A stretch of DNA of 64,000 nt from Octopus sinensis (GCF_006345805.1 NW_021825821.1:496001-560000); one strand, 5' to 3'. Shown: positions 10,277 through 62,830, counted from the stretch's first letter. Numbers and translations: made by a program. The notes: generated by a model not told the origin, from the letters alone.

Positions 10277-12336
10277 CAGTGATTCTCAAGCTTTTTTGCT
10301 CAGGGGCCGCAAATTAAAAAAAAAATTTACAGGGGCCGCAAATAATTTTTAAGATTATTTATTAACCAAATAATCAAAATTAGGTTTAATTCTACTTGTT
10401 GAAGTACGTAACAAATCACTCAGATGAGTATCAGTCAATCTGCTGCGAAACTTTGTTTTAATTCGAACGAGTTTACTAAATGTCGATTCGCAGACATATC
10501 TTGATCCAAACATTGCTAAATTTTTCTTTGCATTATTGACTAAATTCGGAAATCGGTTCTCTGGAATTCTCGAATAAAAGTCAATTATTGAAATGTTGTT
10601 GAACAAACTTTTCAGTTCAACATCATTTTGCAAATCAATCAATTCCAGTTGGTAAATCCCGGAAACCTCCTCACTTTTCATAATTAATGGAGATGCAAAT
10701 AATCTCATTGAATTTGCACCTTCTTTAAAGCTCTGTCAGCTTAAATTAAATACTAAAAACATGAAATCTTGCATCAAATTGCAAATTTAAATCTTCAATT
10801 ATTTTTAAATATTTATCAGTTGAGCCACTTTCGGAATTTTCTGACAAATAAGGAAAATGTGTGTAATCATTATTTGATATCTGCGCTTTCCATAAAATTA
10901 ATTTCTTAACGAAGGCATTTATATATCCATAAATTTGATAATTTAGCTTATTTTCCCCTTGTAGTTCGACATTTAGGGCAGACAGATGCACCGATAGATC
11001 CACATAAAATGCTAAATCTGCTACCCATCTATTGTCTTTCAATAATGCATTGTCCACTTTATTTTCAGTGAATAAAATAATTTCAGGGAGAAGTTGATAA
11101 AATCTAAATATAAAAATAAAAGAAATTAACCTTTTGAGACAAGAGCTACGGCTTAACCATCTTACTACTGAGAAAAGAAGGACATCGCCATAATCCGAAT
11201 CGGTTTCAGTTAAAAATGTTTTAAATTTTCGGTGATTCAAGGCGTTCGCCCGAATCCAATTGACAATTTTTATCACTACTTCAGAAACATTTTCCATTTT
11301 AATATTTTTGGAAATTAGGTTTTCCTGATGAATAATGCAATGATGCCATAATACTGGAGTCCAGTTATTATCACACCTCCATTTATTCATACGTCCACGA
11401 AAACCAGTTTTACTGCCAATCATATAAGGGGCTCCATCAGTTGAAATTGAAACTAATTTTTTTGGATCCAGTTGATAATCTTCAATTAATTTCACAATTG
11501 GAGAAAAAATCTGTGTTCCTTTAGTTTCTCCGTGAAGTGAATTCAATGAAAAAAATTCTTCGTATACTCGAAAGTCAGATGTTACTCCCCTTATAAACAC
11601 TACTAATTGTTCGATATCTGAAATATCTTTGGAACAATCAAGCGCAAAAGAATAATATTGAAAATCTTTACAAATTCTAAAAATTACAAAACAATTTGCA
11701 TACTGTAAAAGTTCGTTAATCAGATTATCAGATATATCACTGACTCTTCTAGTAACAGTATCGTTACTTAGAGGTAACTTGTGTGCAATATCGAAAACAG
11801 CGGGCGAACAACATTCCGATGCAAATATTTCGATTGCCGTTTTATATAATTCGCCATCAGAATAAGGCTTCATATTTTTAGCCAATAGGTAACTAATTTT
11901 GTATGATGCCAGGTTAATATTAGACGAATATGTGCCACTTTTGAAAGTAAATGATCGTTTTAAATAATCTTCTTTCATTTGTTTTAGTTTTTTCGTCCGA
12001 GAAACACCAGTGAATTTGTCATAAAGAATAGAGTGGAAACGGTAGTGCCGTTCGATTGTATACGTTTTTAGAGTTGCAATAATAGAATGGCATATTAGGC
12101 AAAGAGCCTTTCCATTGATCTCAATAATGAAATATTTTTCTTCCCAGATGTGTTGAAAAATCCTATTTTCCTCGGAAAGTTTTCGACAACGTTTAGAATC
12201 AGACATCACAACAACAAATAAAAAACGTGACATTTTTTTATTCATAAAATTTAAAAATATTAAATTAAAAAATAAAACATTTATAAAACCTAGGGGCCGC
12301 AAATTAAATCCTAGGGGCCGCACTTGAGAATCACTG
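10277..12336 (-). mobile_element. Intact Buster/SPIN-type hAT DNA transposon
   Basis: 14-bp TIR CAGTGATTCTCAAG at both ends; perfect 8-bp TSD GTCTAGTC (10269-10276, 12337-12344) with central TA; subterminal AGGGGCCGC repeats. Confidence 0.97.
10355..12206 (-). CDS. hAT transposase (SPIN/GTF2IRD2-like) with three tiny introns, about 589 aa spliced
   Basis: BED-like CLIC..H, YSFALD, ISTDGAPYM, HCIIHQE, VRWLSR, FGSRYVCESTFS; introns 11677-11703, 11104-11130 and 10733-10760 give a 1770-nt stop-free CDS. Confidence 0.9.
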
Positions 12337-12369: not shown

Positions 12370-13150
12370 ACTTAAATAACGATATCCAAAAGTAAAAAGA
12401 TAGCTAAGCTAATTAAAGGCCTCACGAGACACCCGGCCAGCCTCGCGAATCGCGAAGCCGTTCCCTCGGATCACAGCAATCGACAGACGTTCCAGGAGCC
12501 AACAAAACTCTCTTGGATCGTGGCTAGTCCTTGAAATCCGTCGACCGAGCGAGCGAAGGAAGCGGAGTGTCTTGGGACCGAAGATCCCGGAGGACTCCAC
12601 GGCAATTGTTGTAAAGAACAGCGAGTTGGAGAGGTGCCCGTACTTGAGAATCTTTCGCTCCTCGGCCTGCCTGGAAGCGTGCCCAGGATTGGCGGCGGAC
12701 AGAGCGAGATTTCCCAGCGAGAACGTGTCCGAACAGGTAGAATCCCAAATAAGGGATTTCCCCTGCTCGTATGGGAAGGTGGACAACCCGTCTGGGCGTT
12801 TGCCATCCCCTCTATTCAGTCCAACAGGTTCAAGGATTGACGGGATGCCAGCTGAAGCGAGGGCTCTCTGTATGATCGAGTAGAGTTCACTGTGACGGGG
12901 GGCACGACCGGCACTCCGCCGGCAAGCGAGGGGATGCAAACCGTACTTGTCAACAGTTCCTCCACAACGGCATATGTGCGTCTGGCAGATTTTCAGCCCG
13001 AGAGGAGGGAGATTGCAATTCTTAGGCATTCCTTGTCCACCAGGTTCCCGATGGAAGGGAGAGCCTTTAATCAGACACCGCTGCCTTCGCAGCGACCTGC
13101 ACGGAGGCAAGCGACACGGTGTTGATTGGAGACAGGAAGGAGGCCTTGTC
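12370..13150 (-). mobile_element. CRE-like element, 5'-truncated 3' part
   Basis: HICRCGGTVDKYGLHPLACRRSAGRAPRH..GDGKRPDG..IWDSTCSD..AVESSG..RLSIAVIRGN; short 3' UTR and A-rich tail. Confidence 0.9.
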
Positions 13151-13245
13151 TTCAATTTTATACATGAAAATCAGATTTTATATAACAATCACTCCAGATA
13201 TGAAAAATAAATATTAAACACAAGAACATTTATTAAGAAAAACAT

Positions 13246-25346: not shown

Positions 25347-25742
25347 TTAAAATGCGCAGCGGATCGACTGGTAATTTCCGCGCATGATGGCCAATGAGAT
25401 CCTTTGAAAGAGTCTGATCGACTCGTTGGGATCTTTCGTGGCAACCACGAGCTTAGATCCAAGGCGGCGGAGAAACGATAGCGTCTGCGGGCCGATGACT
25501 CCAGAGGTTTCCACCGCGACTGCAGTGAATTGGTGATCCTTTGCCAGGACCCGGTACTTCTTATGTTTTGTTAGTTCCGCCTGCTTTGCAACTGAGCCCG
25601 GTTCCGCAGCGGAGGCAATTAGATTCTTGGCGGAGAAAGTGTCGGAACAGGTGGCGTCCCAGATAAGGCATTTCCCCTTTTCAAACGGGAAGATTGACAT
25701 GCCATCCGGGCGCTTACCGTCGCCTCTGTCGAATTTTTTATT
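25347..25742 (-). mobile_element. CRE-like element, 3' fragment
   Basis: DRGDGKRPDG..IWDATCSD..AVETSG..FQRISLAIMRGN. Confidence 0.9.
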
Positions 25743-29354: not shown

Positions 29355-29930
29355 GATGGTTCGAGCCATCCGCGAATCGAGATGGTTTTTCGAGCCATCC
29401 CGCGTCATGCCGCTCTTAACGACCTTATCAGGAGAGCCCTGGAAGTCGCCGGAATCCCCTCCCTGCTTGAACCCACTGGGATCGATCGGGGGGACGGAAA
29501 AAGGCCTGACGGGATAATTGTGTTTCCTTTCAACAGGGGGAAGCCTCTCACCTGGGATGCCACGTGTGTGGACTCTTTCTCGCCTCAGAACCTGCTGATG
29601 TCGGCCTCCGCTCCTGGATCTATTGTCACAACCGCGGAATGCAAAAAGATGCGGAAGTACTCCTCACTTACGGAGAAGTTCCAATTCCTTCCATTCGCGA
29701 TTGAGACTTCCGGTTCCTTAGGCAGTAAGGCAATCAGCTTCGTTCAGGAGATCGGGTCCCGCATGTCTGCCATCACAGGCGACGCCCGCGAATCGAGATG
29801 GTTTTTCGAGCGGATATCCCTTGCGATAGTACGCTCTAACTCTTTCTCGATCGCGTCGGCTTCCCGGCCTTGAAGCTTTTAATTAATTAACTTGTAGTTA
29901 TTGGTTGGTTTGTCAAAAAAAAAAGTAAAA
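29355..29930 (+). mobile_element. CRE-like element, 5'-truncated, with rearranged 5' junction and A-tail
   Basis: PRHAALNDLIRRAL..IDRGDGKRPDG..WDATCVD..FERISLAIVRSN; A-run at about 29916-29933. Confidence 0.92.
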
Positions 29931-45657: not shown

Positions 45658-48640
45658 TTGGATTCTTCTTATTATAGAAGAATGAAAGAAGAAGACTCCA
45701 AGACGATGGAAACTCTTCGGATAGTTGGGAGGGATCCCTCTATCTGTTATGGGTGTAATAAGATCAACACCAGGAAATGTGGCGTTTACTGTTCAATATG
45801 TAATAAATTCTGGCATATTAGCTGCGCGCACCTTACCAAAGCCGCAGTGAAATTACTCCGGCGCTGGAGCTGCCACTGTTGTATGGCTTTACTCGGAACC
45901 GCGGCTTCGCAGCATCAGTCTCCTTCGCTTCATGAACCCAAATCAGAACACTATATTCTAAAAATTTCCAACTTACGGAAATCTAAGAAGATACCATTAC
46001 GTATCCCTAAACAGGCTCGGATCTCAGCGGCAAACTGCTTGTGCGATCTTATCACTGATGCGCTAAGCTCCGGGGGGGACCATTCTTGGATCCGTCTCCT
46101 CTCTTTTGCACCTTGTGTGTTTGGACAAGCAATTGATGGTTCAGTACAAAAGAAGAGTCTCTCGGCTGCCATTAAGTCGAACTCTGCGAGATTGGATGTC
46201 TCATGGATTGATTTCGATTGTGAAGCGACCAATTTCCAAACGTGCATCACGGAAAAATCCCCCAGTGGTTCAAAACCCAAGTTAGTCGTAAACTCATGGA
46301 TGGCGACATCCGTGCGGCAGTTCGGGTCCTTTCGTCCGCTGATTCACTTGCTGAATCTACTGCCGAGACTTTGGAACACCTCAAAAACAAACATCCGATG
46401 CCCCCAGATGACTTACGGGAGTTTCCCACACGAGACAATGCAATTATACTGTCAATTTCTGATGATGAAATTTTGGAAGGGATTAAATCTTTCAGACCGA
46501 GTAGCAGTGGGGGATTTGATGGTCTCCGGCCGAGTCATATAAAGGACATGATTTCCCGATTGACTATGGAGACTGGAATCCGCCTGATCAAGTGTATTAC
46601 CAAGCTTGTCGAACGGATTGTCAATGCTGAGATTTCAGGCTTTGCAAGGGATCTACTTTTCTGTTCACACCTTATTGCTTTCCGAAAGAACGATGGAGGA
46701 GTCCGCCCCATTGCAGTCGGTAATGTCTTCCGGAGGCTGGCATGCAAAATTGCAGCTCGAAGAGTCTGTCCCCGTGTTGCCGCTGAATTATCTCCAGTCC
46801 AACTGGGAGTTGGTGTTTCCAACGGATGTGAAGCTGCTGTCCACGCGACAAGAGCTTTTTTTTCACCTGACACAAGACATTCCCCAAATTCCTTTGCGGT
46901 GAAGCTGGATATCTCAAACGCGTTCAACAGTCTGAGAAGGGACTGTATGCTGGAATCGTGCTCGCAGCGTACCCCAGAGATCATGAGTCTGGCTCACCTT
47001 GCTTACGGGTCCGAAAGTTCGCTTGTCTTTGACAAACACATTGTCCGTTCACGGACTGGAGTCCAACAAGGTGACCCTCTTGGGCCCTTACTATTCGCTC
47101 TGTCAATCGACGAGGTGGCTCGTAATGTAAAGACACCTCTCAACCTTTGGTACCTTGACGATGCCACTATTGGTGGCCCTGTTGATGTCGTCTTGGATGA
47201 GTTATATAAAATTGTTCCTGCCCTGGCAAAAATGGGGCTGATAATCAACACCAAAAAAACTGAGATCATAAATATCTCAGTCCCAATTCAAGACTTTGGC
47301 TTAGTAATGGAAAAGATTTCAGAAATCTTGCCAGACACAAAACAAACACGCCTCAACGATGTTTATTTTCTTGGGTGTCTTTCGGAGAGTCCGAAGTGCA
47401 AAACCACCTCAGAGCTAAGACTGTCGAAATGTCCCGTTTTACTGAACGCCTCTCTCTACTCGACTCCCACACGGCCTTTTTCCTCCTCAAAAATTGCATC
47501 CACGTGCCCAAACTGTTATATTTATTAAGATGCTCGCCCTGTTTTATACAAGATGAAATATTGCATTCTATCGATGATACGTTAAGATTGTGTGCCGAGT
47601 GGATCCTAAATGTCCGTTTCGATAATGATGGGTGGACCCAGTGTAAACTACCTCTTAATTCTGGCGGAGCTGGCCTAAGATCCGCCCTGGATCTTGCCCT
47701 CCCAGCTTTCCTGTCCTCTCACTCATCCTGCCGAAGGCTATCCTTGGAGATTCTACATAAATCCCCCGAATCTTCTTTGGACAGGCCTTTTGAAGATGGA
47801 TGTATGCTGTGGAAGGAATCAGGATTAAATTCCCGATCCAAACATCACTCCAACAGAGCTGGGACAAATTACGCTGCGAATTCACCGCAGACAACCTGGC
47901 AATGAGGCTCGACCAGCACCGCCTCGCCTGCTTACGCTCTGCAGCTGTGCCACACAGTGGGTCATGGCTGAATGCTATGCCAATTGCTGGCCTCGGAACA
48001 TTATTAGAGGATGACTGCATGCGTATCGGTACTGCACTGAGACTCGGACTTAACATCTGCGAACAACATCGTTGTAAATGTGGAAAAATGGTTGACGTCA
48101 AAGGGGTACACCCACTCTCTTGCAAACGAAGTGCTGGCCGAGCTCCTCGGCACTCCGCTATTAACAATGTTATCTTAAGAGCTCTTGAGTCGGCGGGCTT
48201 CCCCTCGATCCTAGAGCCAGTAGGCTTAGATCGTGGAGATGGGAAAAGACCCGATGGAATGACCACTTTTCCCTACTCCTGTGGAAAATCGTTGGTTGGG
48301 ATTCAACGTGTGTTGACACCCATTCCAAAACTAATATGATCTCTTCTGCTGTTTCTCCAGGTTCTGCATCAGATGCTGCAGAGCAAAGAAAAATTGCCAA
48401 ATACGCAAATCTTGGACAACGGTACCGCTTCGTACCTATCGCTGTGGAGACTTCTGGGGTAACCGGCCCTCTTACGACTTCTTTCATCAGAGAAGTCGGA
48501 GGAAAAGTTGCTAGGCGACGTGGGGAGCCTCGAGAAGTGTCATGGTTATTCCAACAAATTGGAATAGCTGTCGTTCGCGGCAATGCACACTCCATCATGC
48601 GTGCAACCGCAAGTGCCTTTTAATTATAGAAGAATAAACA
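45658..48640 (+). mobile_element. Near full-length CRE-like element: PHD finger, RT, RLE; several frameshifts
   Basis: C4HC3 finger CYGC..CSIC..H..C..WSCHCC; RT RPIAVGNVFRR, KLDISNAFN, GVQQGDPLGP, WYLDD; RLE CKCG..H..SC..RH..GKRPDG..AVETSG. Confidence 0.93.
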
Positions 48641-48721: not shown

Positions 48722-50659
48722 CAGTAAAACCTCTCGAATCCGCCGATTTTGGGACCGACCAAAAAATCGGCGGATTCGAGAAATCGGCGGATTCGAGAGG
48801 CAATTTAAATAATATTTTATAGTGTGAAACATGAACTCACAATATAGATTAAGTATTTCTTTTCATATACAAATGACTGAATACATAAAATATTTATATT
48901 CAAAAAAAATCAGAAATTTTATTTTTTTAATTGATTTCTTAGCATTCCCCAATTCGCATAATATTTTCATGATCATCTATATCTGCATTTACCTAAGAAG
49001 CATAAGTTTTAATAATCTCTAGAGCTCTGAAGGCTTCTGAGAGATCAACTTTTTTCTCATTTGATTCCTCTTCAATCATTGTTTCCTAAGTATAATTATT
49101 AAATAAAATCACTAACTGATTGAACTTTTTTTGACTGTAATGTACTAGCTTGTTCAGATTTGTCTAAAAATTCGATTAGCTCTTCATTTTCAGTATATCC
49201 GTAATCAACAAATTCACTATAAGATATTGGATCGTCAATTTGAAATTTCTTAATTATTTCTTCATAATTATTTTCTTAGTTCTTAGATTCACTGTTGATT
49301 GTGATTGTTTCACATTTATCCATTGTGCATGACGGAAACAATTTTTGATGGTCGTAGGAGTAACTTTATTCCAAGCGAAGAATGTTAATGTCGCAGCAGT
49401 TTTAAGGGTGATTCCATTAATTGCATTCTGACAATTTTCCCCTGCCTCAACCTTTTCGATTATATCATTTATTTTCAAATTGGTAAATTCGGCTTTAAAG
49501 CATTTTATAATTCCTTGATCCATTGGTTGTAAGAGCGAAGATGTTCTAGAAGGCAAAAAAAGAATTTCAATTGAGTTTAACGTGACAATAATTTGATGAG
49601 ATGGACATTGATCTATTACAAGTAGAATTTTTCTTTTTTCTTCGCAAGTTCACAATCAAAATCATGAGCCACTTGTTAAAAATTTCACGGTTCATCCATG
49701 CCTTATTGGAATGGGTGTAGGTAACATATTTTCCAATGTTGAAATTTTTAAAACACCTTGGACTTTTGAATCTTCCTATCATTACAGGCCTTCTTTTATC
49801 GGAACCAGAACAATTTGCACATAATAGTAACGAAAATCGATCCTTCGACAACTTTATTCCAGGCCGTGATTTAGTGCACACACTTTTGGAAGGAATCGCC
49901 TTGTAAAAAACACCAGTTTCATCTGCATTATAAACATTGTCCAATCCATATTGTTCAATTTTTAAACTCATTGTTTCATTAAAATCAGTAATAGATTTTT
50001 CATCATGATTTACTGATCCACTGTCTCCGTGAAATTTTCTTAACTTGATACCATTTCGTAATTTAAACTTTTCTAGCCACCCACGACTTGCTTTAAATTC
50101 TGGAAAATTTTTTCAAAATTTAAGGGCTTTTGCAATTAACATCGAATCTAATAGAATTGCTCCACTAGATTCCATTAAGTTAATCCATGTTATCATCGCT
50201 ACATCAATTTCATTAAATTTGAGTTTTGGAATTCTCGTTATGTTTAATTTTTTGATGTCAGTCCTATTCAAAAGGTCCGATTTTTATTTAAGGTCGTTTA
50301 TAGTTCTCGGAGAAAGATTTCTTTTTTAACCGTGAAGAAAAAATCCTGGAAATTTGAGGTGCAGAAACGAATGGGTTGTCAGAAATATAACGTAGTATAG
50401 AAATTTTTTCGTTGATAGAAAGTCTAACACAACGACGCATCACAAAAATACAATTTAACGTGTAATGAGAATTTTAAAATGTTAATTAATTTAACTTACA
50501 ATAGAGATAAAAAAATTATTTTTCATAATACTTGAGGAGCGGATTCGAGAAACAAGCGGATTCAAGAATCATTCATAGGAAATTTCAAATTTTTGATTAA
50601 AACAAGCGGATTCGAGAAGCGGCGGATTCGAGAAGCAGCGGATTCGAGAGGTTTCACTG
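48722..50659 (-). mobile_element. pogo/Tigger DNA transposon, full length, transposase frameshifted
   Basis: 22-bp TIR CAGT(A/G)AAACCTCTCGAATCCGC, TA TSD both sides, many subterminal CGGATTCGAG; KASRGWLEKFK, VYNADETG, KAWM, LLQPMDQGII. Confidence 0.95.
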
Positions 50660-52973: not shown

Positions 52974-55900
52974 TTACTTTCTTCTATTACCCACTCCGCC
53001 CATAATAGAAAGGATTCGAACAAAAATATTAAAAACGTCAATATAGATCAGAGGTTTCCAAGCTTTTTTTTACGCGCCTCCCTTAGAGAAAAAGTACAAT
53101 CTTGCGCCTCCCTTTATATTCCATAATATAATACAATTATTATTTTATCAAAAACAATTTTTTAAAACAAAAGTTAATGAGATAATTTTTTTTCCATCTT
53201 GGCGCAAAGTTTTTCAAATTGGTGTCATCGCAGAGAGTGCTACTTTAGCTCATTAGTCACTACTAAACGAGTTCGATATTTAGATTTAATTGCAGCTAGT
53301 GCAGAAAATCCAGTTTCGCATAAATATGAAGTAGCAAATGGCAACAAAACTTTCATTGCTTTATTCGACAAAATTTCATATTCCGTTCTTACATTCAACC
53401 AAAAAGAAATTAGCGGTTCTCTCTCAAATTTTTGTTTCAATAATGTATCGCATGACAATTCTATCAATTTTTCTTTTTCAAAAGTTGTCAATGCAAATTG
53501 ATTATCTTCTTCATCATAAATGGATTCTGTATCCATTCGAACATTTTACAGTCGAGATCTTTAAAATAGTGAGCAAAATGCTTCAACAAACAATCCAAAT
53601 GTTCAGCAAATATGTCTTTGTTGCTTCAATGTTCACTATGGCGCAAAAGGTGTTTAAAAGTGGAAACATGTCATAGATATTTTTTGTGTATATTTGATTT
53701 CCATAATATCATTTTTTCATAAATGCTTTTATTTTGTCTTTTTGAGCGAATAAATATAGTTGTGATCCCTGCATTGATTTATTCAATATACTCAATTTCC
53801 CAAAAATGTTAACCAAATAGGCAAATTTGACAATAAAATCATCATCCCTGAACAAATTTGCATCTTCATCAAGAAAATCTGCAACTTGATCTTTGAGTTC
53901 AAACACCCTTCAAATCATTTTTGCATGAAACACCCAGCGCACCTCACAATAGTATAAAAGCGATGTATATTTTGAATCCATATCTTCACACAGCTTTGCA
54001 AAAGCTTAGCTTTTAAAGGACTGTGTTTTATGTAGTTTATAACTTTTGTAATTTGCGCAAAAATATCGTTCAGTTCTGGACTCATATTCTTTGAGACAAG
54101 TGCTGATCTGTGCAGCATGCAGTGCGTCCAGATAATTTCTGGTGCTCTGTTTTTTACAAGAGCTTGAAGACCAGATTTATTTCCTGACATTGACTGTGCT
54201 CCGTCTGTACAAAGTCCAACACAATTGATCCATTCTATGTTATTTTCTTCAAAAAAAGTATCAATTATATTAAAAATTTCATTGGCCGTGCTCCTTCCAG
54301 AAATGGTTTGCAGAATAATAGATCTTCTATTATTGTACTTTCTTCAGCATATCTGACATATGCAATTAAATGTGCATTTTTATTTATGTCAGCTCCCTCA
54401 TCAACTTGTATAGCAAATTTACAGTTACGTAGTCGAGAAACCAACTGATCACAAAGATCTTCAGATATGTCATCAATTCTTCTAGCGACTGTGTTATCAG
54501 CAAGCGGTATTTGCTGTAATTGTTTTGCATAGGATTCGCCAAACATTGCTTCAACCATATCGATAGCTGCTGGCAAAACTAGAGTTTCTCCGATATTGTG
54601 CGGTTTCTTGCATTTTGCAATCCTGTAAGAAACTTTGTACGATGCTAGTAAAGCATTTGAAGAGACAGAAACAGTTTTTTTAACGATTTCGTTTGGTTAT
54701 CAAACTCTTCTAATTTTCTTTTAAAAATTCTTCAGACTTATGGACATGTTCAGAATGCATCGTTTCAAAATGTCTTCTTAATTTGCATGGCCTCATACTA
54801 TCTGCTGCAAGTGTTTTGAGGCAAAGCAAACAGAGGGGTTTTTCCATAGAATCAACAAAGATACGTGTGAATCCTAACAATAAGTAAGATGGAAAGTATT
54901 TTCTTGTCTTTGGAGTGGTATTGATTATATCCCATCATTTTGATTTTTTGAACCATCGTCAAAATCTTTATTATTCGTGAATTTTCTTTTGCAACCACTC
55001 AAGAATTTATTCATGTGTTAAAATTATTTAATTGTCTAATAAATTAAATAAATTTTTGAAAAAATATAATTTTTAAATTAATAACTCTTATTATCGGAAT
55101 ATAGTCACGTTTTTTACATAGATATAATTTTCTAAAAAATGTTTCTGAAATACTTTTCGCGCCTCCCTTGACACGAGTCAACGCCTCCCTAGGGAGGCGC
55201 GCCTCCCCATTTGGAAACCTCTGATATAGATAGAAAGCGACCTAAAACACCCACTATAAAATTACATATTAATAGGATCGAAAGGCATATATGGATTCTC
55301 TGCATATTTCACTACACGTTGAGTGTCGTAAAGCAGAAATAACGAAAACAAAACCAATCCACCATAAACCGACATTGAATACAACCACGACCCAGCCACA
55401 GTCCCCACAGGAACAAATATGGAAGCTACCACTCAAAATAACACCCAACCAAGAGAAGAGGCAGCCACAACTCCAAGTCCGATCCCCAAAACCCCTCCAT
55501 ATTGCAAGAATCTTTCATTGGGGGCACACAAAGCAATGGTGGACAACGACAATGCCACTCCACCTGTCATAAGAGCTGCCCTCAAGGCCAATTGTGACCC
55601 CAATACGAATATCATTGGACTCACCATTGCCCCTAACAAAGCCAAATGTGCACCCAAAAATAATTTTTTAGGGGAAATGAAGTCATTTGTGTAAGGAATC
55701 GATCTAAGAATAGCACCCGACCCCACAACACTCAGGAATAGCCCGATTGAGGACTAAATAGAACAGTTTTAGGTACAAGAAGAGGACGGGTCACAAGGAA
55801 CTGGCGAAACCAGGCCACTTTGGATAGATTGTAGGCAGAAAGAGCAGAAACAACGACACTCCCAAAAAAATAGGAATATGTGCTCTGTAGACGATCCCTG

Positions 55901-56184
55901 ACATAGGAGGGCCACATTACTGATCTCTCTAATATTCCTGGACGAGAAGACAGTCGGGCTCCGTAGAAGCAAAGAGCTCCAAACCCGAACACAGAGGCAC
56001 CGAGGAGTAGTCCCTGGCCAGCGACAAATGCAGAATCCCCGGCAGGTGATTTCAAATAGGATAATATCCCTGGCTTTTTTGCTTTTTCTCGTACGAATGG
56101 TCTTGCTTTGTTTGATATGTTTTCAAATCTTGTTTTAGTGAAGATTAATCGTCCATATAAATTTATTTGTCGAGAAAAGAGCAT
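52974..56184 (-). CDS. GHITM: GHITM/MICS1 (TMBIM5); last exon interrupted by a hAT
   Basis: WPSYVRDRLQSTYSYF, LSTIALCAPNERFLQYGGVLG, YGGLVLFSLFLLYDTQRV, DPINMSLSIY, then after the transposon IDVFNIFVRILSIMGGVGNRRK-stop (53048-52974). Confidence 0.93.
53049..55223 (-). mobile_element. Buster/Charlie-type hAT (ZBED5/SCAND3-like), transposase frameshifted
   Basis: 13-bp TIR CAGAGGTTTCCAA; perfect TSD ATATAGAT (53041-53048, 55224-55231); GCGCCTCCC subterminal repeats; DNTVARRID, FAIQVDE, CTDGAQSM, HCMLH, FATSYLCETGFS. Confidence 0.97.
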
Positions 56185-56407: not shown

Positions 56408-57547
56408 TTAAGCGGGAGAATTATGATCGTTAATAAGTTTAGTCAGTTCCGGCACAATCTACAAATAAAATAAGAAAAACACCTCAAATAAATCCCCAAC
56501 CACTCCATAGTCACAAAAATCAAAAATCGGAGCATCCTCATTCTTGTCAATTGCCACAATAATTTTACTGTCCTTTATTCCCGCCAAATGTTGAATGGCG
56601 CCAGATATTCCCACAGAAATATACAGTTCAGGTGACACCACCTTGCCTGTCTGTCCCACCTGCAAATCATTCGACACCAATCCAGCATCCACCGCAGCCC
56701 TCGTCGCCCCAACTGCCCCACCCAGACTGTCCGCCAGTTTATATACCAACTCAAAGTGCTCAACCGTCTTCAACCCTCTCCCTACCACATCACACAACCC
56801 TCAACCCCCAGAAACAACAACACGTGCAGTACTCAGACTCGGTCTATCCGATTTGACCTCATCTTTGCTAATAATCCTCACAGCATTGGAATCAGTTGGA
56901 GGCACAGAGACTGATTCTATAGCAGTAGGGCACTCTCTCTGGGTCACATCCCCCTTGAAGCCCCTCACAGTCATCACTTTTATACTGTCCTTCCATTTGA
57001 AGTAACTCACCACATTCCCTACCTTTCTAACTAACATTACTACCAGCATATAATCGCCTCTCAAAAATATCTCCTACAATCCCTGTGACGTCACTGGCCA
57101 TTGATACATTCAATTTGGCGGCAACTCTGGCCAGTGAGTCCTTAAGGTGGGTTAATGATACTACCCTCATAGTAGAACTACTTCCCCCTATTACGTGCGA
57201 GTAGTCCCCCGATGATAGGACTTTTAATATGAGGGGGACTAGTCCTATGTAGATAGTACAGTATGGACAGACCAGAGCCACTGTCCTGTGCTTGTAGAAC
57301 GTGGTCTATTCCGTCTATGAGGGAGATTTGGTCAGATAACTAATATAGTCAGTATTCTAGATACAGTTTGTGTGTGTAGGTCAGATGTCACCAAACATGT
57401 TACTTTGTTGTTTAGTAGAGATGAAGCTGAAATTGCACTTCTTGTTGCTTCACTTAGAACAGCCCCGTTTGGTTCTGCAATGACGAGGGTACCAATTTTT
57501 CGAAAGGGTGAAAATGGTATTAGTCTTCTAATACTGGCACACCTCAT
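56408..57547 (-). CDS. ETFA: Electron transfer flavoprotein alpha subunit
   Basis: [65 protein letters not shown]; six introns of 24-28 nt. Confidence 0.96.
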
Positions 57548-58083: not shown

Positions 58084-59360
58084 CAGTGGTTCTCAACGGT
58101 GGGCGATTCGCCCCCTAGGGGCGATTTTTTTTGGTAGGGGGGCGATGGCTGATTGCTAATATTTGAAAAATTAAAATCTTATGTTAGAAGTCGATAATCT
58201 TTGAAAAAATAAAGATATATAATCGAGTCTAATAATATTTATTAATAATATGATATTTTTATTATATTTTATTTAAATTTCTAAGCGTGATTTCTAGTTA
58301 TCTTTATGGGTCGTGTTCAAAAAAAAGTCAGAATGTATAAAGATGAATATATTTCTCTTGAATTTATTAAAGATCCTCAAGATCCTAATAAACCACTTTG
58401 TCTTCAATGTGGTACAATTTTTTCGAATGAGGCAATGAAACCGTTTCGTTTGATTGAACATTTAAAGCGAAAACATCATAATTCAATTGGAAAAAAGCCA
58501 GACTTTTTTCTAGAATTAAAAAAGAATTTTGAAAATAAAAACACCTTACCGTCAATCTTTAATAAAAATGTCTCTGGATTATCTTATTCATATAAAGTTG
58601 CAGAGATAATCGCAAAAACTGGTTGCATTATTATTTTAATTTATAGGTAATGGCCATTCGATTGCAGAAAATGTCATCCGTCCTTGTTTAAATGTATTTA
58701 TAAACGATATCTTACAAAAAGATTCTTCAAATATTATGAAGACTATTCCATTAAGCAACGACACTATACGAAGAAGAATTGATGAAATTCCTGAAAATTT
58801 ATGAATTTCATTTAGAATCTTTGGAACAAGATTTGAAAAAAAGATTTGAAGATTTAATTAATTTAAACTTTTCTGATTGGATGATTAATCCTTGGTTGCC
58901 CATTCATTATGATTCTGATGATGAATGTCAAGAAGAATTAATAGAACTAAAAAACGACGAAGAACTGAAAATAAAATTTAAAAATGAAAACCTGACACAA
59001 TTCTGGGGAGAAAAATCTATAAAAATGAAATTCCCGAAATTATGGGAAAAAATGATGCCAATAATATTATGTTTCCTACGTCATACTGCGTAGAGAGAGG
59101 ATTCAGCACTCTGAATAGTATGATCGGAAAAAAAGAAACAAACTAAATATAGAAGAAAGAGGCGACATTAGAATTACACTTACGAAAAGAAGTACAAATT
59201 TTGAAAAACTTGTCAATCTTCATCAACCACAAGGATCTCATTAAAACTCTTATTTTTTAAATAAAAATTTTTACTAATAAAATAAGGGGGCGATATAAAA
59301 ATTGGAGGGGCGAAAAAAATTCCAAGGGGGCGATACAAAAATAAAGGTTGAGAACCACTG
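58084..59360 (+). mobile_element. Internally deleted Buster-type hAT with an intron
   Basis: 14-bp TIR CAGTGGTTCTCAAC; TSD GTTTAGAA (58076-58083, 59361-59368); BED finger CLQC..H..RKH; DTIRRRIDEI fused to the C-terminal part; 25-nt intron 58622-58646. Confidence 0.95.
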
Positions 59361-60110: not shown

Positions 60111-60997
60111 TTATATTGGATGAGTGCAGTTAATAAGCAGACATAGGTCTTTGGCATCCCTTAGTTTGTCGATACTAAATAAATCAAAGTAATTGTAAGG
60201 CTTATAGTCGTCATATGATACCTCAAACATCGTCAACAAAAATGTACTTTAAAATCACTGGCCGGTTTATATCCCTCTGGATTGACATTTTTAATAGCAA
60301 AAATGACCGAATATTCCAAATCAAAAGTGGCCAAAATTTTGTAACTATGAGAAGGCACCCACACTTTCCCGGGACCAATTTCCTATAAATTAATGGCCCA
60401 ATAAAACGTCGATAGGTTTAGAGTCAACGAAGAGAGCTCCTGTAATGACATAAAGTCCATCCACATATCCGTCCAAAACCGAATATCTAACAATCCTCTC
60501 TAAATTTGCCCATCGCTGTCTGTTGAATTCGCCAACTTGTGGCATTATATTTGAAAGCAAGAAAGTAGAACACTGTATTGTCTGAATTGATAATTTTTGG
60601 AATATTCTGACCTGATTTCCGTCGCTATCTCCAGCAGGGAAAGCATGTCCTCGATCATACCCGGAGTGGTGGTAGTCTTCTAACATCGAACGGTATTCCG
60701 CTGGAATTCGATCGTCGGAATGGAAATGGCAATTAGATCGAGAGGCATTTCCTTTGAGTTATTTGTGGGTTTCAGACCAGTGAGAAGTTCCTTAGTGAGG
60801 TTGTAGACTGACCACATTGGGACCTTGGCCTTGTAGCTGTAGCCTACGGAATAATTTGAATTTTTAAATGTATGAATCTGATAATCAAATTTCCTGTGAG
60901 AATTTTCTAGAATGTTTATTAACAAACATATACTGTTGAAATTAAATAAATCCGTGAAATACCCAAATATTCCGAAAATACCCAATAACCAGCTCAT
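60111..60997 (-). CDS. DNA/RNA nonspecific endonuclease (EndoG/NucA fold), possibly secreted
   Basis: YSVGYS..PMWSVY, SGYDRGHAFPAGD, TFLLSNIMPQ..FNRQRWANLE, VITGALF, GPGKVWVPSHSYKI; hydrophobic N-terminus; tiny introns; start uncertain. Confidence 0.85.
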
Positions 60998-61362
60998 ACC
61001 GACAGAAAAAATTATCAATTATTATTTATAATTTTATTACAATATAATAAAATTAAAGCGCAATATAATAAAATTGAGAAATAAATAATAAACTATAGTT
61101 TCTTCTTTAAAGATATCTAATAAATTTGCTATAAAAAACCAAATTATCGCATCCATTTACAAAATTAATTAAAAATAGATAAATTAAATTAATTTTTTGA
61201 TTTAATTTGTTGAACTGCAATGTTTGACAGATTTTGTAGAATTAGTAAAAATTTTGTCTTGTTTTTCAAAAGTATGAAAATTGTACAAAGTATAATTTTC
61301 AAAAAACCATTAAAAAGAATATAGAATTAAATTATTTAAGTTATCCAAGCTTCTCCAGTATA

Positions 61363-62830
61363 ATGAACTCCAAACAGAAATTCACAGACCAAAATGATCA
61401 ATTTCTCCTTAAAATTGATGTCAAAAACGCGTTCAACTCGATTCGGCGCGATTATATCCTTGAAACTGTCCGAAGTCGTTTCCCTGCCTTATATCCGATC
61501 GTCCATCTGTCTTACGCCTCCCCCAGCTGTCTCTTGTTTGCCGACAATGTTATTATGTCCGAAACTGGTATTCAACAAGGCGACCCTCTTGGGCCTCTTT
61601 TATTCTCACTCGGTGTTGATCACATTACCCGCCAATTGTCCTCTGAGGTCAACATTTGGTACCTCGATGATGTTACTCTCGGTGGGGCTTTGGAGATCGT
61701 CAATAATGATGTAGAAAAAATCATTTCTGGTTTTGCTTCCATTGGGCTCGCTTTGAATGGATTAAAATCCGAGCTGATATGTTTGTCTGCGAGCCCTTCA
61801 GAATTCAAACTTATTTTTTCCACCTTATCTCACCATTTTGAAGACCTGTGCATCACCCAGCTTGATGACCGTATCATTCTGGGTTCCTCAATCAATAGCA
61901 AGGCTACTAAGAAGGCTTTATGTAACAGGCTCGAAGAATTGGAAACTCTAATCTCCCGCATTTCCAAACTTGAATCCCATTTAGGCCTTTTCTTGCTCAA
62001 GAACAATCTATACCGAAGCTAACTTATCTCATCTCAGTTCAAAAGAACTGGGATAATATACATTGTTTGCATGTACTCGAAGATATCCGCCTACGTGCTG
62101 ACTAGTTTCAGTTGGCAAGCATTAATTGTGCCTGTCAACCCCACTCGGCCGATTGGCTTAACGCTTTGCCGATTTCCTCTGCTGGAATGTTCCTGGACGA
62201 CGAATCTGTCCGCATCGGAATCTGTTTACGGCTTGGCATAGAGATTTGCTAGCCACATCAGTGCAGATGCGGAAAGGTCATTGACAGGAGAGGGCTACAT
62301 CCCTTCTCTTGTCGCCTCAGTGCGGCCGAATATCCAGACATGCCGCCTTGAATGATATTGTCAAGCACGCGCTCTACGCCGCTGGATTACCTACGGTCCT
62401 GGAGCCGGTTGGGTTAGACCGTGGTGACGGAAAACGTCCCGATGGGTCCACGCTATTCCCGTTCAAAGGGGGACTCGCTCTCGTTTGGGACGTCACCTGT
62501 GTCGACTCGCTTTCCTCGTCATCTCCCATTGACTCTGCCTCCCGCCCTGGCTTAGCCTCCGCACATGCCGAAACAAAAAAAATCACAAAGTACGCCTCAT
62601 TGGAGAGCACCTGCTTTTTCGTCCCTCTGGCTTTCGAGACGAGTGGGATAATCGGCCCAAAACCCCTGGAGTGCCTTTCGGAGATCGGCTTGATGATCTC
62701 AAGGAAGAGTCACAAAAGACGTGAGTCTAGCTGGCTTTTCAGCGAATTTCGCTCGCGATATTACGCGGAAACTGCCTGTTTATTCGCTCGTCCTCTCAAT
62801 CAAAGAATTAACGTGGATCATTGAATTATT
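61363..62830 (+). mobile_element. CRE-like element, RT + RLE, 5'-truncated with internal deletion
   Basis: KIDVKNAFN, GIQQGDPLGP, WYLDD; CRCG..H..SC..RHAALN..GKRPDG..WDVTCVD. Confidence 0.92.

What the first reader, a model, noticed from the sequence alone, without database searches (positions are those of the whole stretch)
52974..55260. hAT transposon inside the last coding exon of GHITM, with terminal GT/AG sites able to restore the frame
Seen: the GHITM frame ..DPINMSLSIY is broken by a 2175-bp hAT with perfect TIRs and an 8-bp TSD, and the missing tail (IDVFNIFVRILSIMGGVGNRRK-stop) resumes at the other side. Unspliced, the protein would end IRGFQMGRRASLGRR-stop and lose most of its last TM helix. 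On the GHITM strand the TIR reads CAGAG|GTTTCC (GT at 55218-55217), and the far end reads AAAAAAAG|CTTGGAAACCTCTG (AG at 53064-53063). Joining them leaves exactly 27 extra nt (5+14+8 TSD), giving SIYI-RAWKPLIYI-DVF in frame. Inference: the element may act as a newborn 2156-nt intron in a genome whose introns are about 26 nt, or this is a recent null or polymorphic allele. The acceptor lacks a pyrimidine tract, so splicing is only a hypothesis.
Basis: partly seen in the sequence, partly recalled or inferred. Interest (0 to 1): 0.8.

Follow-up and report, generated by a model that had tools for sequence, protein, structure and literature searches.

The report
Dead hAT transposon splitting parasite GHITM
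A decayed cut-and-paste (hAT/Buster) transposon sits in the last exon of the mitochondrial channel gene GHITM, most likely knocking that copy out rather than acting as a new intron, and the DNA appears to come from a dicyemid parasite whose sequence was assembled into an octopus genome.

Summary
GHITM lies on the minus strand (56184-52974) with three introns of 23-24 nt. A 2175-bp element (55223-53049) with 13/13 TIRs and an 8-bp TSD (ATCTATAT) splits the last exon. The GT/AG pair 55218/53063 would leave 27 nt in frame.

New facts change the reading:
- The window is contig VCDQ01004311.1 of the Octopus sinensis assembly. Its conserved genes have 23-28 nt introns (11 of 11), so it is most likely dicyemid parasite DNA.
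- The element is a Buster/ZBED5-type hAT. Its transposase gene has at least 7 frame changes and at least 3 stops.
- It is inserted one codon before the pore aspartate (human D325), in the middle of the last helix.
- The frame-restoring pair is unremarkable: 2 of 56 nearby pairs restore the frame. The proposed intron would be about 90 times the local intron length and ends in AAG.
- A TAG lies 30 nt after the same donor, and seven AATAAA signals lie inside the element.
- Even the spliced product would carry R, K and P in mid-helix.

Most likely this is an ordinary disruptive insertion allele. Splicing could not be tested, because no RNA or reads from this organism are reachable with these tools.

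The parts
52974..56184 (-). GHITM/TMBIM5 gene. ATG at 56184 and stop ending at 52974, with four coding exons. The empty-site product is 318 aa.
   Evidence: Pfam Bax1-I 5e-35. 44-49% identity to animal GHITM.
55754..55776 (-). GHITM intron 1, 23 nt, GT..TAG.
55426..55449 (-). GHITM intron 2, 24 nt, GT..TAG.
55242..55265 (-). GHITM intron 3, 24 nt, GT..TAG.
55224..55241 (-). First part of the last coding exon (..M SLSIYI). Its last 8 nt (55231-55224) are TSD copy 1, ATCTATAT.
53049..55223 (-). Buster/ZBED5-type hAT element, 2175 bp, in the same orientation as GHITM.
55211..55223 (-). 5' TIR on the gene strand, CAGAGGTTTCCAA.
53049..53061 (+). 3' TIR (TTGGAAACCTCTG on the gene strand).
53177..55014 (-). 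Transposase pseudogene. The ATG is kept at 55014. There are at least 7 frame changes and at least 3 in-frame stops relative to the intact 624-aa relative P0110.
55158..55201 (.). Subterminal repeats (A/T)AGGGAGGCGCG at the 5' end (55158-55169 and 55190-55201).
53073..53114 (.). Subterminal repeats AAGGGAGGCGC(G/A) at the 3' end (53073-53084 and 53103-53114).
53063..53064 (-).
55189..55191 (-). TAG 30 nt downstream of the candidate donor. It is a competing acceptor of the size normal for this genome. Using it gives ...SIYIRGRR*.
52974..53048 (-). Orphaned end of the last exon. It comprises TSD copy 2 (53048-53041), then DVFNIFVRILSIMGGVGNRRK and the stop. It holds the pore Asp D298 and the invariant residues N301, I302, F303 and R305.
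56408..57547 (-). Upstream neighbour ETFA, 329 aa, with six introns of 24-28 nt.

Best explanation
A non-autonomous, already decayed copy of a Buster/ZBED5-type hAT transposon was pasted into the last coding exon of GHITM (TMBIM5), in a genome whose features are those of a dicyemid, a kidney parasite of octopuses. This genome was co-assembled into the Octopus sinensis reference.

The transposase cut at ATCTATAT and duplicated it. The break falls between codons I297 and D298, in the middle of the last helix and one residue before the pore aspartate of the di-aspartyl motif.

Transcripts of this allele most likely do one of three things:
- read into the element and stop after 15 foreign codons;
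- end at one of the AATAAA signals inside the element;
- lose a 30-nt cryptic intron and stop after 4 foreign codons.

Each outcome gives a protein without D298 or the invariant NIF.R segment, so this is a loss-of-function allele. The perfect TSD and TIRs and the undamaged orphan tail suggest the insertion is young. It is probably polymorphic or heterozygous in the parasite population that was sequenced.

Shown: the insertion, its family, its exact position in the protein, the local intron model and the source contig. Inferred: the fate of the RNA, the loss of function, the young age and the dicyemid origin.
For: - Anatomy and TSD/TIR.
- Family: homology to ZBED5-like proteins. ZBED5 is Buster1. 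The TSD fits the Buster consensus nnnTAnnn. A 69%-identical relative has the TIR CAGCGGTTTTCAAACT.
- Dead copy: at least 7 frame changes and at least 3 stops.
- Position: an alignment of 17 GHITMs puts the break before near-invariant D298 and invariant N301, I302, F303 and R305. The mouse sequence ..IYMD.. places D326 (human D325) at this column. D326R destabilises the protein and causes myopathy and perinatal loss.
- Structure: an AlphaFold model of the Elysia homologue shows one continuous last helix, 309-331, with the Asp (319) at its centre. The fold matches BsYetJ.
- Local introns: 11 of 11 are 23-28 nt.
- Competing signals: a TAG at +30 and seven AATAAA signals.
- Source: the window is identical to O. 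sinensis contig VCDQ01004311.1. Among animals, introns under 30 nt are known only in Dicyema and myxobolids. D. japonicum lives in O. sinensis and has GC 36.7% and 49% repeats. The window has GC 36.2% and is rich in LINE and DNA-transposon remnants.
Against: - No RNA or read data were available, so read-through, premature polyadenylation and loss of function are all inferred.
- The rest of GHITM (957 nt of coding sequence) has no frameshift or stop, and the 23-codon tail keeps every invariant residue. If the element decayed in place, this would argue that the gene is still under selection and is therefore rescued in some way.
- Dicyema has a tail of longer predicted introns (mean 38 nt against a median of about 27), so long introns are not impossible.
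- Splice motifs in Dicyema are reduced, so a weak-looking site cannot be dismissed.
- Only one copy of the element was seen in 64 kb, so decay before insertion is not shown.
Confidence: 0.6

Rival explanations
1. The spliceosome removes 2156 nt of the element, using GT 55218 in the TIR and AG 53063 just inside the other TIR. This leaves 27 nt and gives a 327-aa GHITM with RAWKPLIYI inserted. The element would then behave as a new intron, as Ds or Tc1 insertions in exons sometimes do.
For: The GT and AG exist and restore the frame without a stop. Because of the TSD, the Asp keeps its local context IYID. One local intron (ETFA intron 3) also ends in AAG, and local introns have no pyrimidine tract either. 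GHITM upstream and the tail are intact. Transposons that supply splice sites and become introns are well documented.
Against: The interval is about 90 times the length of all 11 local introns. The acceptor is AAG after A8, against TAG in 9 of 11. A TAG lies 30 nt after the same donor, and seven AATAAA signals lie inside the element. Two in-frame pairs out of 56 is what chance gives. The GT belongs to a TIR motif shared by the family. The nine inserted residues include R, K and P, and they would lie in the middle of the pore-lining last helix, so function is doubtful even if splicing occurs. Only one copy was found, so there is no introner-like family.
Confidence: 0.1
2. The insertion is old or fixed and is tolerated. 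Either the truncated protein (311 aa, ending in 15 foreign residues) still serves, or a second GHITM copy exists, or GHITM is being lost as part of the gene loss typical of this parasite.
For: The transposase gene is heavily decayed, which would fit an old insertion. Dicyemids have lost many genes, with only 5,012 predicted. Mouse D326R animals are partly viable.
Against: The TSD (8/8), the TIRs (13/13) and the 23-codon tail show no change at all, and the upstream 957 nt have no lesion. With the indel load seen in the element, about 3-4 frameshifts would be expected in a GHITM pseudogene of the same age (my estimate). The missing part holds the pore Asp and four invariant residues.
Confidence: 0.15
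3. Removal at the DNA level. The element is present in the germline and is excised from somatic nuclei, in the manner of ciliate internal eliminated sequences, so somatic cells carry an intact GHITM.
For: Somatic genome rearrangement, chromatin elimination and extrachromosomal circular DNA have been reported in dicyemids. hAT ends with an intact TSD are a substrate for cut-and-paste excision.
Against: There is no evidence here. hAT excision usually leaves footprints rather than restoring the site (established knowledge, not tested here). The reported circles are mostly 600-800 bp and related to mitochondrial DNA. The local copy encodes no active transposase.
Confidence: 0.03
4. An assembly artefact: a transposon copy wrongly joined into GHITM.
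For: The contig is a low-abundance contaminant in another species' assembly, so read support may be thin.
Against: An exact 8-bp duplication of the target flanks complete TIRs, and the exon resumes in frame to the base. That is the signature of transposition, not of a mis-join.
Confidence: 0.02

Closest known systems
Buster family of hAT DNA transposons (TcBuster, AeBuster, Mar; domesticated ZBED5/Buster1, FAM200, SCAND3)
   Same: 8-bp TSD fitting nnnTAnnn. Short TIR beginning CAGAGG. A transposase of about 620 aa, 69-72% identical to intact ZBED5-like proteins and carrying the DUF4371 and FAM200-ZBED5 domains in those relatives.
   Different: This copy is a pseudogene. It is the only copy in 64 kb. 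Its host appears to be a dicyemid, and I found no description of hAT elements in dicyemids in the papers read.
Transposons removed from exons by cryptic splicing (maize Ds/dSpm alleles, C. elegans Tc1, Drosophila 412 in vermilion)
   Same: A candidate donor in the terminal repeat and a candidate acceptor near the other end. Removal would be imprecise and would leave a small in-frame insertion.
   Different: Those cases rest on RNA evidence, and there is none here.
Introners (intron-generating transposons of Micromonas, fungi, dinoflagellates and others)
   Same: A DNA transposon with TIR and TSD inside a coding exon, with GT and AG near its ends.
   Different: Introners are multi-copy, mostly short non-autonomous families. 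Their splice sites, often completed by the TSD, remove them cleanly, and RNA evidence supports this. Here there is a single 2.2-kb copy, 27 nt would remain, and no RNA data exist.
TMBIM5/GHITM channel-pore mutants (mouse D326R, human D294R/D325R)
   Same: The lesion hits the same aspartate. In the read-through product Asp298 is replaced by Arg and the rest of the helix is lost.
   Different: This is a natural transposon allele in a parasite, not an engineered point mutation. Its phenotype is unknown.

Membership tests
hAT superfamily, Buster family | 8-bp target site duplication fitting nnnTAnnn | tested here: met
   ATCTATAT on both sides.
hAT superfamily, Buster family | Short terminal inverted repeats of the CAG... 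type | tested here: met
   CAGAGGTTTCCAA, 13/13. The relative L005 has CAGCGGTTTTCAAACT.
hAT superfamily, Buster family | Transposase homologous to Buster/ZBED5 proteins | tested here: met
   E = 7e-255, 69% identity over 100% of the query to P0110. Named hits are ZBED5-like, FAM200A-like and SCAN domain 3-like. ZBED5 is Buster1.
hAT superfamily, Buster family | Intact reading frame (an autonomous element) | tested here: not met
   At least 7 frame changes and at least 3 in-frame stops. This copy cannot make transposase.
Introner (intron-generating transposon) | Many near-identical copies occupying intron positions in different genes | tested here: inconclusive
   Only one copy in the 64-kb window. 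The rest of the genome could not be searched.
Introner (intron-generating transposon) | Splice sites that remove the element and leave the reading frame intact | tested here: inconclusive
   A GT/AG pair restores the frame but leaves 27 nt. Clean removal is not possible with GT..AG.
Introner (intron-generating transposon) | RNA evidence of splicing | not testable with these tools
   No transcripts of this organism are in the collections searched.
Spliceosomal intron of this genome (dicyemid type) | Length in the local range | tested here: not met
   2156 nt against 23-28 nt in 11 of 11 introns. The published median is 27 nt.
Spliceosomal intron of this genome (dicyemid type) | GT..AG boundaries with the usual TAG acceptor | tested here: inconclusive
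   GT and AG are present. The acceptor is AAG, seen in 1 of 11 local introns, against TAG in 9 of 11.
GHITM/TMBIM5 (TMBIM family) | Bax1-I domain and orthology-level similarity to GHITM | tested here: met
   Pfam PF01027 at 5e-35. The best hits are all GHITM. The homologue's predicted structure matches BsYetJ with TM-score up to 0.80.
GHITM/TMBIM5 (TMBIM family) | Di-aspartyl pore motif | tested here: met
   D271 (LLYDTQ) and D298 (IYID) are present in the empty-site product and correspond to human D294 and D325. D298 lies downstream of the insertion.
Dicyemid genome (source assignment) | Introns mostly under 30 nt, spiralian affinity, cephalopod host | tested here: met
   11 of 11 introns are 23-28 nt. 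The top GHITM hits are molluscs and annelids. The contig comes from the O. sinensis assembly. The trait is restricted to Dicyema and myxobolids. No dicyemid reference sequence was compared directly.

The most novel reading that the evidence does not exclude
The element is tolerated because it is removed. One route is at the RNA level, as a 2.1-kb intron spliced by machinery otherwise tuned to 23-28 nt introns; that would be a newborn intron caught in the animal lineage with the shortest introns. The other route is at the DNA level, in the somatic nuclei of a dicyemid, an animal reported to eliminate chromatin and form circular DNA; that would make transposons inside exons behave like ciliate eliminated sequences.
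Probability: 0.1. Interest if true: 0.75.

Novelty: new member of a known kind. Interest (0 to 1): 0.3.

Why it matters
As it stands, this is an ordinary transposon knockout allele of a conserved mitochondrial channel gene. Its value is mostly practical, in two ways.
- It flags a 688-kb contig of the Octopus sinensis reference as probable dicyemid DNA. Proteins annotated from that contig carry the wrong species label.
- It documents a Buster-type hAT in a dicyemid.

If the allele proved to be fixed and rescued by splicing or by DNA excision, it would bear on how new introns arise in a genome under extreme pressure for short introns. It would also bear on the poorly understood somatic genome rearrangements of dicyemids.

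Tried and rejected
1. Transcript or alternative-allele evidence.
- The full GHITM search found nothing above 49% identity.
- Exact look-up of nine window ORFs found none of them.
- A control search with the neighbouring ETFA also found no same-species protein.
- The collection therefore lacks this organism, and the absence of a GHITM transcript means nothing.
- An exact 39-mer from exon 3 was absent from the JGI metagenome contigs.

2. Other copies of the element.
- TIR and subterminal-motif searches in the window found only this copy. The hit at 25502 is a chance match.
- The second hAT, at 12323-10746, is only 29% identical to the Buster relative.

3. Tiny introns in place of frameshifts in the transposase gene. 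Rejected, because the alignment to P0110 is continuous across each frame change.

4. Structure of the window's own protein. I used the Elysia homologue instead.

5. Sequence search of PDB. No hit. The fold search did find BsYetJ.

6. Octopus origin of the element. None of the listed hits that carry a species name is from Octopus.

7. A chimeric contig. Rejected for this window, because BMS1 at 2-5.6 kb has the same tiny introns as GHITM and ETFA at 53-57.5 kb.

Full report
**Observation.** On the minus strand, a GHITM gene starts at 56184 and ends with its stop at 52974. I rebuilt it by script. It has three GT..AG introns of 23, 24 and 24 nt (55776-55754, 55449-55426, 55265-55242). Its last exon is split by a 2175-bp element (55223-53049).

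The element has perfect 13-bp terminal inverted repeats (CAGAGGTTTCCAA). It is flanked on both sides by ATCTATAT. A motif AAGGGAGGCGCG occurs four times in the window, twice inside each end, where 0.09 would be expected by chance.

With the element and one ATCTATAT removed, the gene encodes 318 aa. This product matches Pfam Bax1-I at 5e-35, and its best database hits are animal GHITM proteins at 44-49% identity, with molluscs and an annelid at the top. Read through, the protein ends ...SIYIRGFQMGRRASLGRR*.

**Where the DNA comes from.** Only one ORF of the window is present in the protein collection, a reverse transcriptase at 41134-40073. It lies on contig VCDQ01004311.1 (688,008 bp) of GCA_006345805.1, which is the Octopus sinensis assembly. 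The fetched 21 kb is identical to window 30073-51134, so the window corresponds to positions 496,001-560,000 of that contig.

The conserved genes in the window are not built like octopus genes.
- ETFA (57547-56408) gives a clean 329-aa product after removal of six introns of 24-28 nt.
- BMS1, at the far end of the window (about 5579-2036), has the same kind of intron; two were checked, of 26 and 24 nt.
- In total, 11 of 11 introns are 23-28 nt.

Among animals, introns under 30 nt are known only in Dicyema and in myxobolid myxozoans. The published median is 27 nt in Dicyema sp.. Dicyema japonicum lives in the renal sac of O. sinensis and has 36.7% GC and 49% repeats rich in LINEs. The window has 36.2% GC and is full of LINE, pogo and hAT remnants.

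The most economical reading is that this contig is dicyemid DNA co-assembled with the host. I found no paper reporting this, and I compared no dicyemid reference sequence directly.

**What the element is.** A conceptual translation matches about 620-aa proteins at E down to 7e-255, with 69-72% identity. The named hits are ZBED5-like, FAM200A-like and SCAN-domain-3-like. [quoted passage not shown] The Buster target consensus nnnTAnnn fits ATCTATAT. A 69%-identical relative on a Logan contig has the TIR CAGCGGTTTTCAAACT.

The copy is dead. Aligned to the intact relative P0110, its coding region (55014-53177) changes frame at least seven times and has at least three in-frame stops. The alignment stays continuous across each change, so these are indels and not tiny introns. 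No other copy lies in the window.

**Where it hits the protein.** In an alignment of 17 GHITMs, the break falls between I297 and D298. Downstream lie near-invariant D298 and invariant N301, I302, F303 and R305. The mouse exon 9 sequence ..IYMD.. identifies this Asp as mouse D326 (human D325), the pore aspartate of the di-aspartyl motif. The D326R mutation destabilises TMBIM5 and causes myopathy and perinatal loss.

Its last helix runs 309-331, with the Asp (319) at the centre. The model's best structural matches are BsYetJ crystal structures.

The element therefore cuts the last helix in half. In the read-through product Asp298 becomes Arg and the rest of the helix is lost.

**Is it spliced?** Nothing here can show RNA, so I weighed the sequence evidence.
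- *Chance.* Within 150 nt of the ends there are 8 GT and 7 AG, giving 56 pairs. Two of them restore the frame, both through the same AG. A frame-restoring pair is what chance would give.
- *Length.* 2156 nt is about 90 times the local intron length.
- *Acceptor.* Local acceptors are TAG in 9 of 11, CAG in 1 and AAG in 1. The candidate is AAG after eight A's.
- *Competition.* The same donor has a TAG exactly 30 nt downstream (55191-55189). That interval fits the local intron model. Using it gives ...SIYIRGRR*.
- *Termination.* Seven AATAAA signals lie on the sense strand inside the element.
- *Product.* Even if the splice occurs, nine residues including Arg, Lys and Pro would sit in the middle of the pore-lining helix, directly before the Asp.

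Some points favour rescue. GHITM upstream of the insertion has no lesion, and the 23-codon tail keeps every invariant residue, while the element has many lesions. If the element decayed in place, that contrast would imply continued selection on GHITM. The alternative is that the copy was already dead when it was mobilised in trans, which is common for DNA transposons. That alternative fits the flawless TSD and TIRs, and I prefer it, but only other copies of the family can settle the matter.

**Verdict.** I put 0.6 on a real, probably young and polymorphic, disruptive insertion of a dead Buster-type hAT in a dicyemid GHITM gene. The rivals are:
- an old or fixed insertion that is tolerated (0.15);
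- somatic DNA excision (0.03), given the reported chromatin elimination and circular DNA in dicyemids;
- an assembly artefact (0.02), which the exact TSD argues against.

**Comparison with known systems.** The element is a member of the Buster hAT family on TSD, TIR and transposase homology, but it is not autonomous.

It resembles the classical cases of transposons spliced out of exons (Ds, Tc1, 412; from my own knowledge) and the introners only in having GT and AG near its ends. The defining features of introners could not be shown here: multi-copy families, clean removal and RNA support. Copy number and frame restoration were inconclusive, and RNA support could not be tested.

**What could not be done.** The decisive data exist publicly for D. 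japonicum (PRJNA496385, RDEW00000000, GHAB00000000).

Noticed in passing
whole window (contig VCDQ01004311.1, positions 496,001-560,000, of GCA_006345805.1): The window belongs to the Octopus sinensis reference assembly, yet BMS1, GHITM and ETFA all have 23-28 nt introns (11 of 11). This trait is known in animals only from Dicyema and myxobolids. The 688-kb contig is probably dicyemid parasite DNA, and proteins annotated from it (for example the RT at 41134-40073) would then carry the wrong species label. No paper in the library reports this.
   Followed up: partly
55189-55218 (minus strand): The candidate donor GT in the TIR is followed 30 nt later by TAG. This forms a cryptic intron of the size normal for this genome, lying entirely inside the transposon end. 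It would compete with any long-range splice.
   Followed up: yes
10746-12323 (minus strand): A second hAT-like gene with a 525-aa open frame (Spin-doc zinc finger, weak DUF4371). It is only 29% identical to the Buster relative P0110, so it belongs to a different family and is better preserved than the copy in GHITM. Its ends were not mapped.
   Followed up: partly
58306-59093 (plus strand): Two ORFs resembling the N- and C-terminal parts of a hAT transposase, with no Pfam hit, between ETFA and the nuclease gene. They look like an internally deleted hAT remnant.
   Followed up: no
12409-13155 (-), 29382-29873 (+), 47800-48623 (+), 62309-62824 (+): Four ORFs share a conserved block LEPxG(L/I)DRGDGKRPDG. 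Two of them lie just downstream of reverse-transcriptase ORFs, and the two submitted to Pfam had no hit. They may be the C-terminal endonuclease-like domain of one LINE family that is abundant in this genome.
   Followed up: no
49254-50443 (minus strand): A pogo/Tigger-type DDE_1 transposase remnant split over several frames, about 2.5 kb downstream of the GHITM stop.
   Followed up: partly
60390-61018 (minus strand): A DNA/RNA non-specific endonuclease (Endonuclease_NS) gene in two overlapping ORFs. They are probably joined by another tiny intron, which I did not model.
   Followed up: no
L005 (Logan SRR19201356 contig, 2648 bp): An apparently complete, intact relative of the element: a 624-aa transposase, 69% identical, with TIRs CAGCGGTTTTCAAACT at 60-75 and 2633-2648. 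Its host organism was not identified.
   Followed up: no
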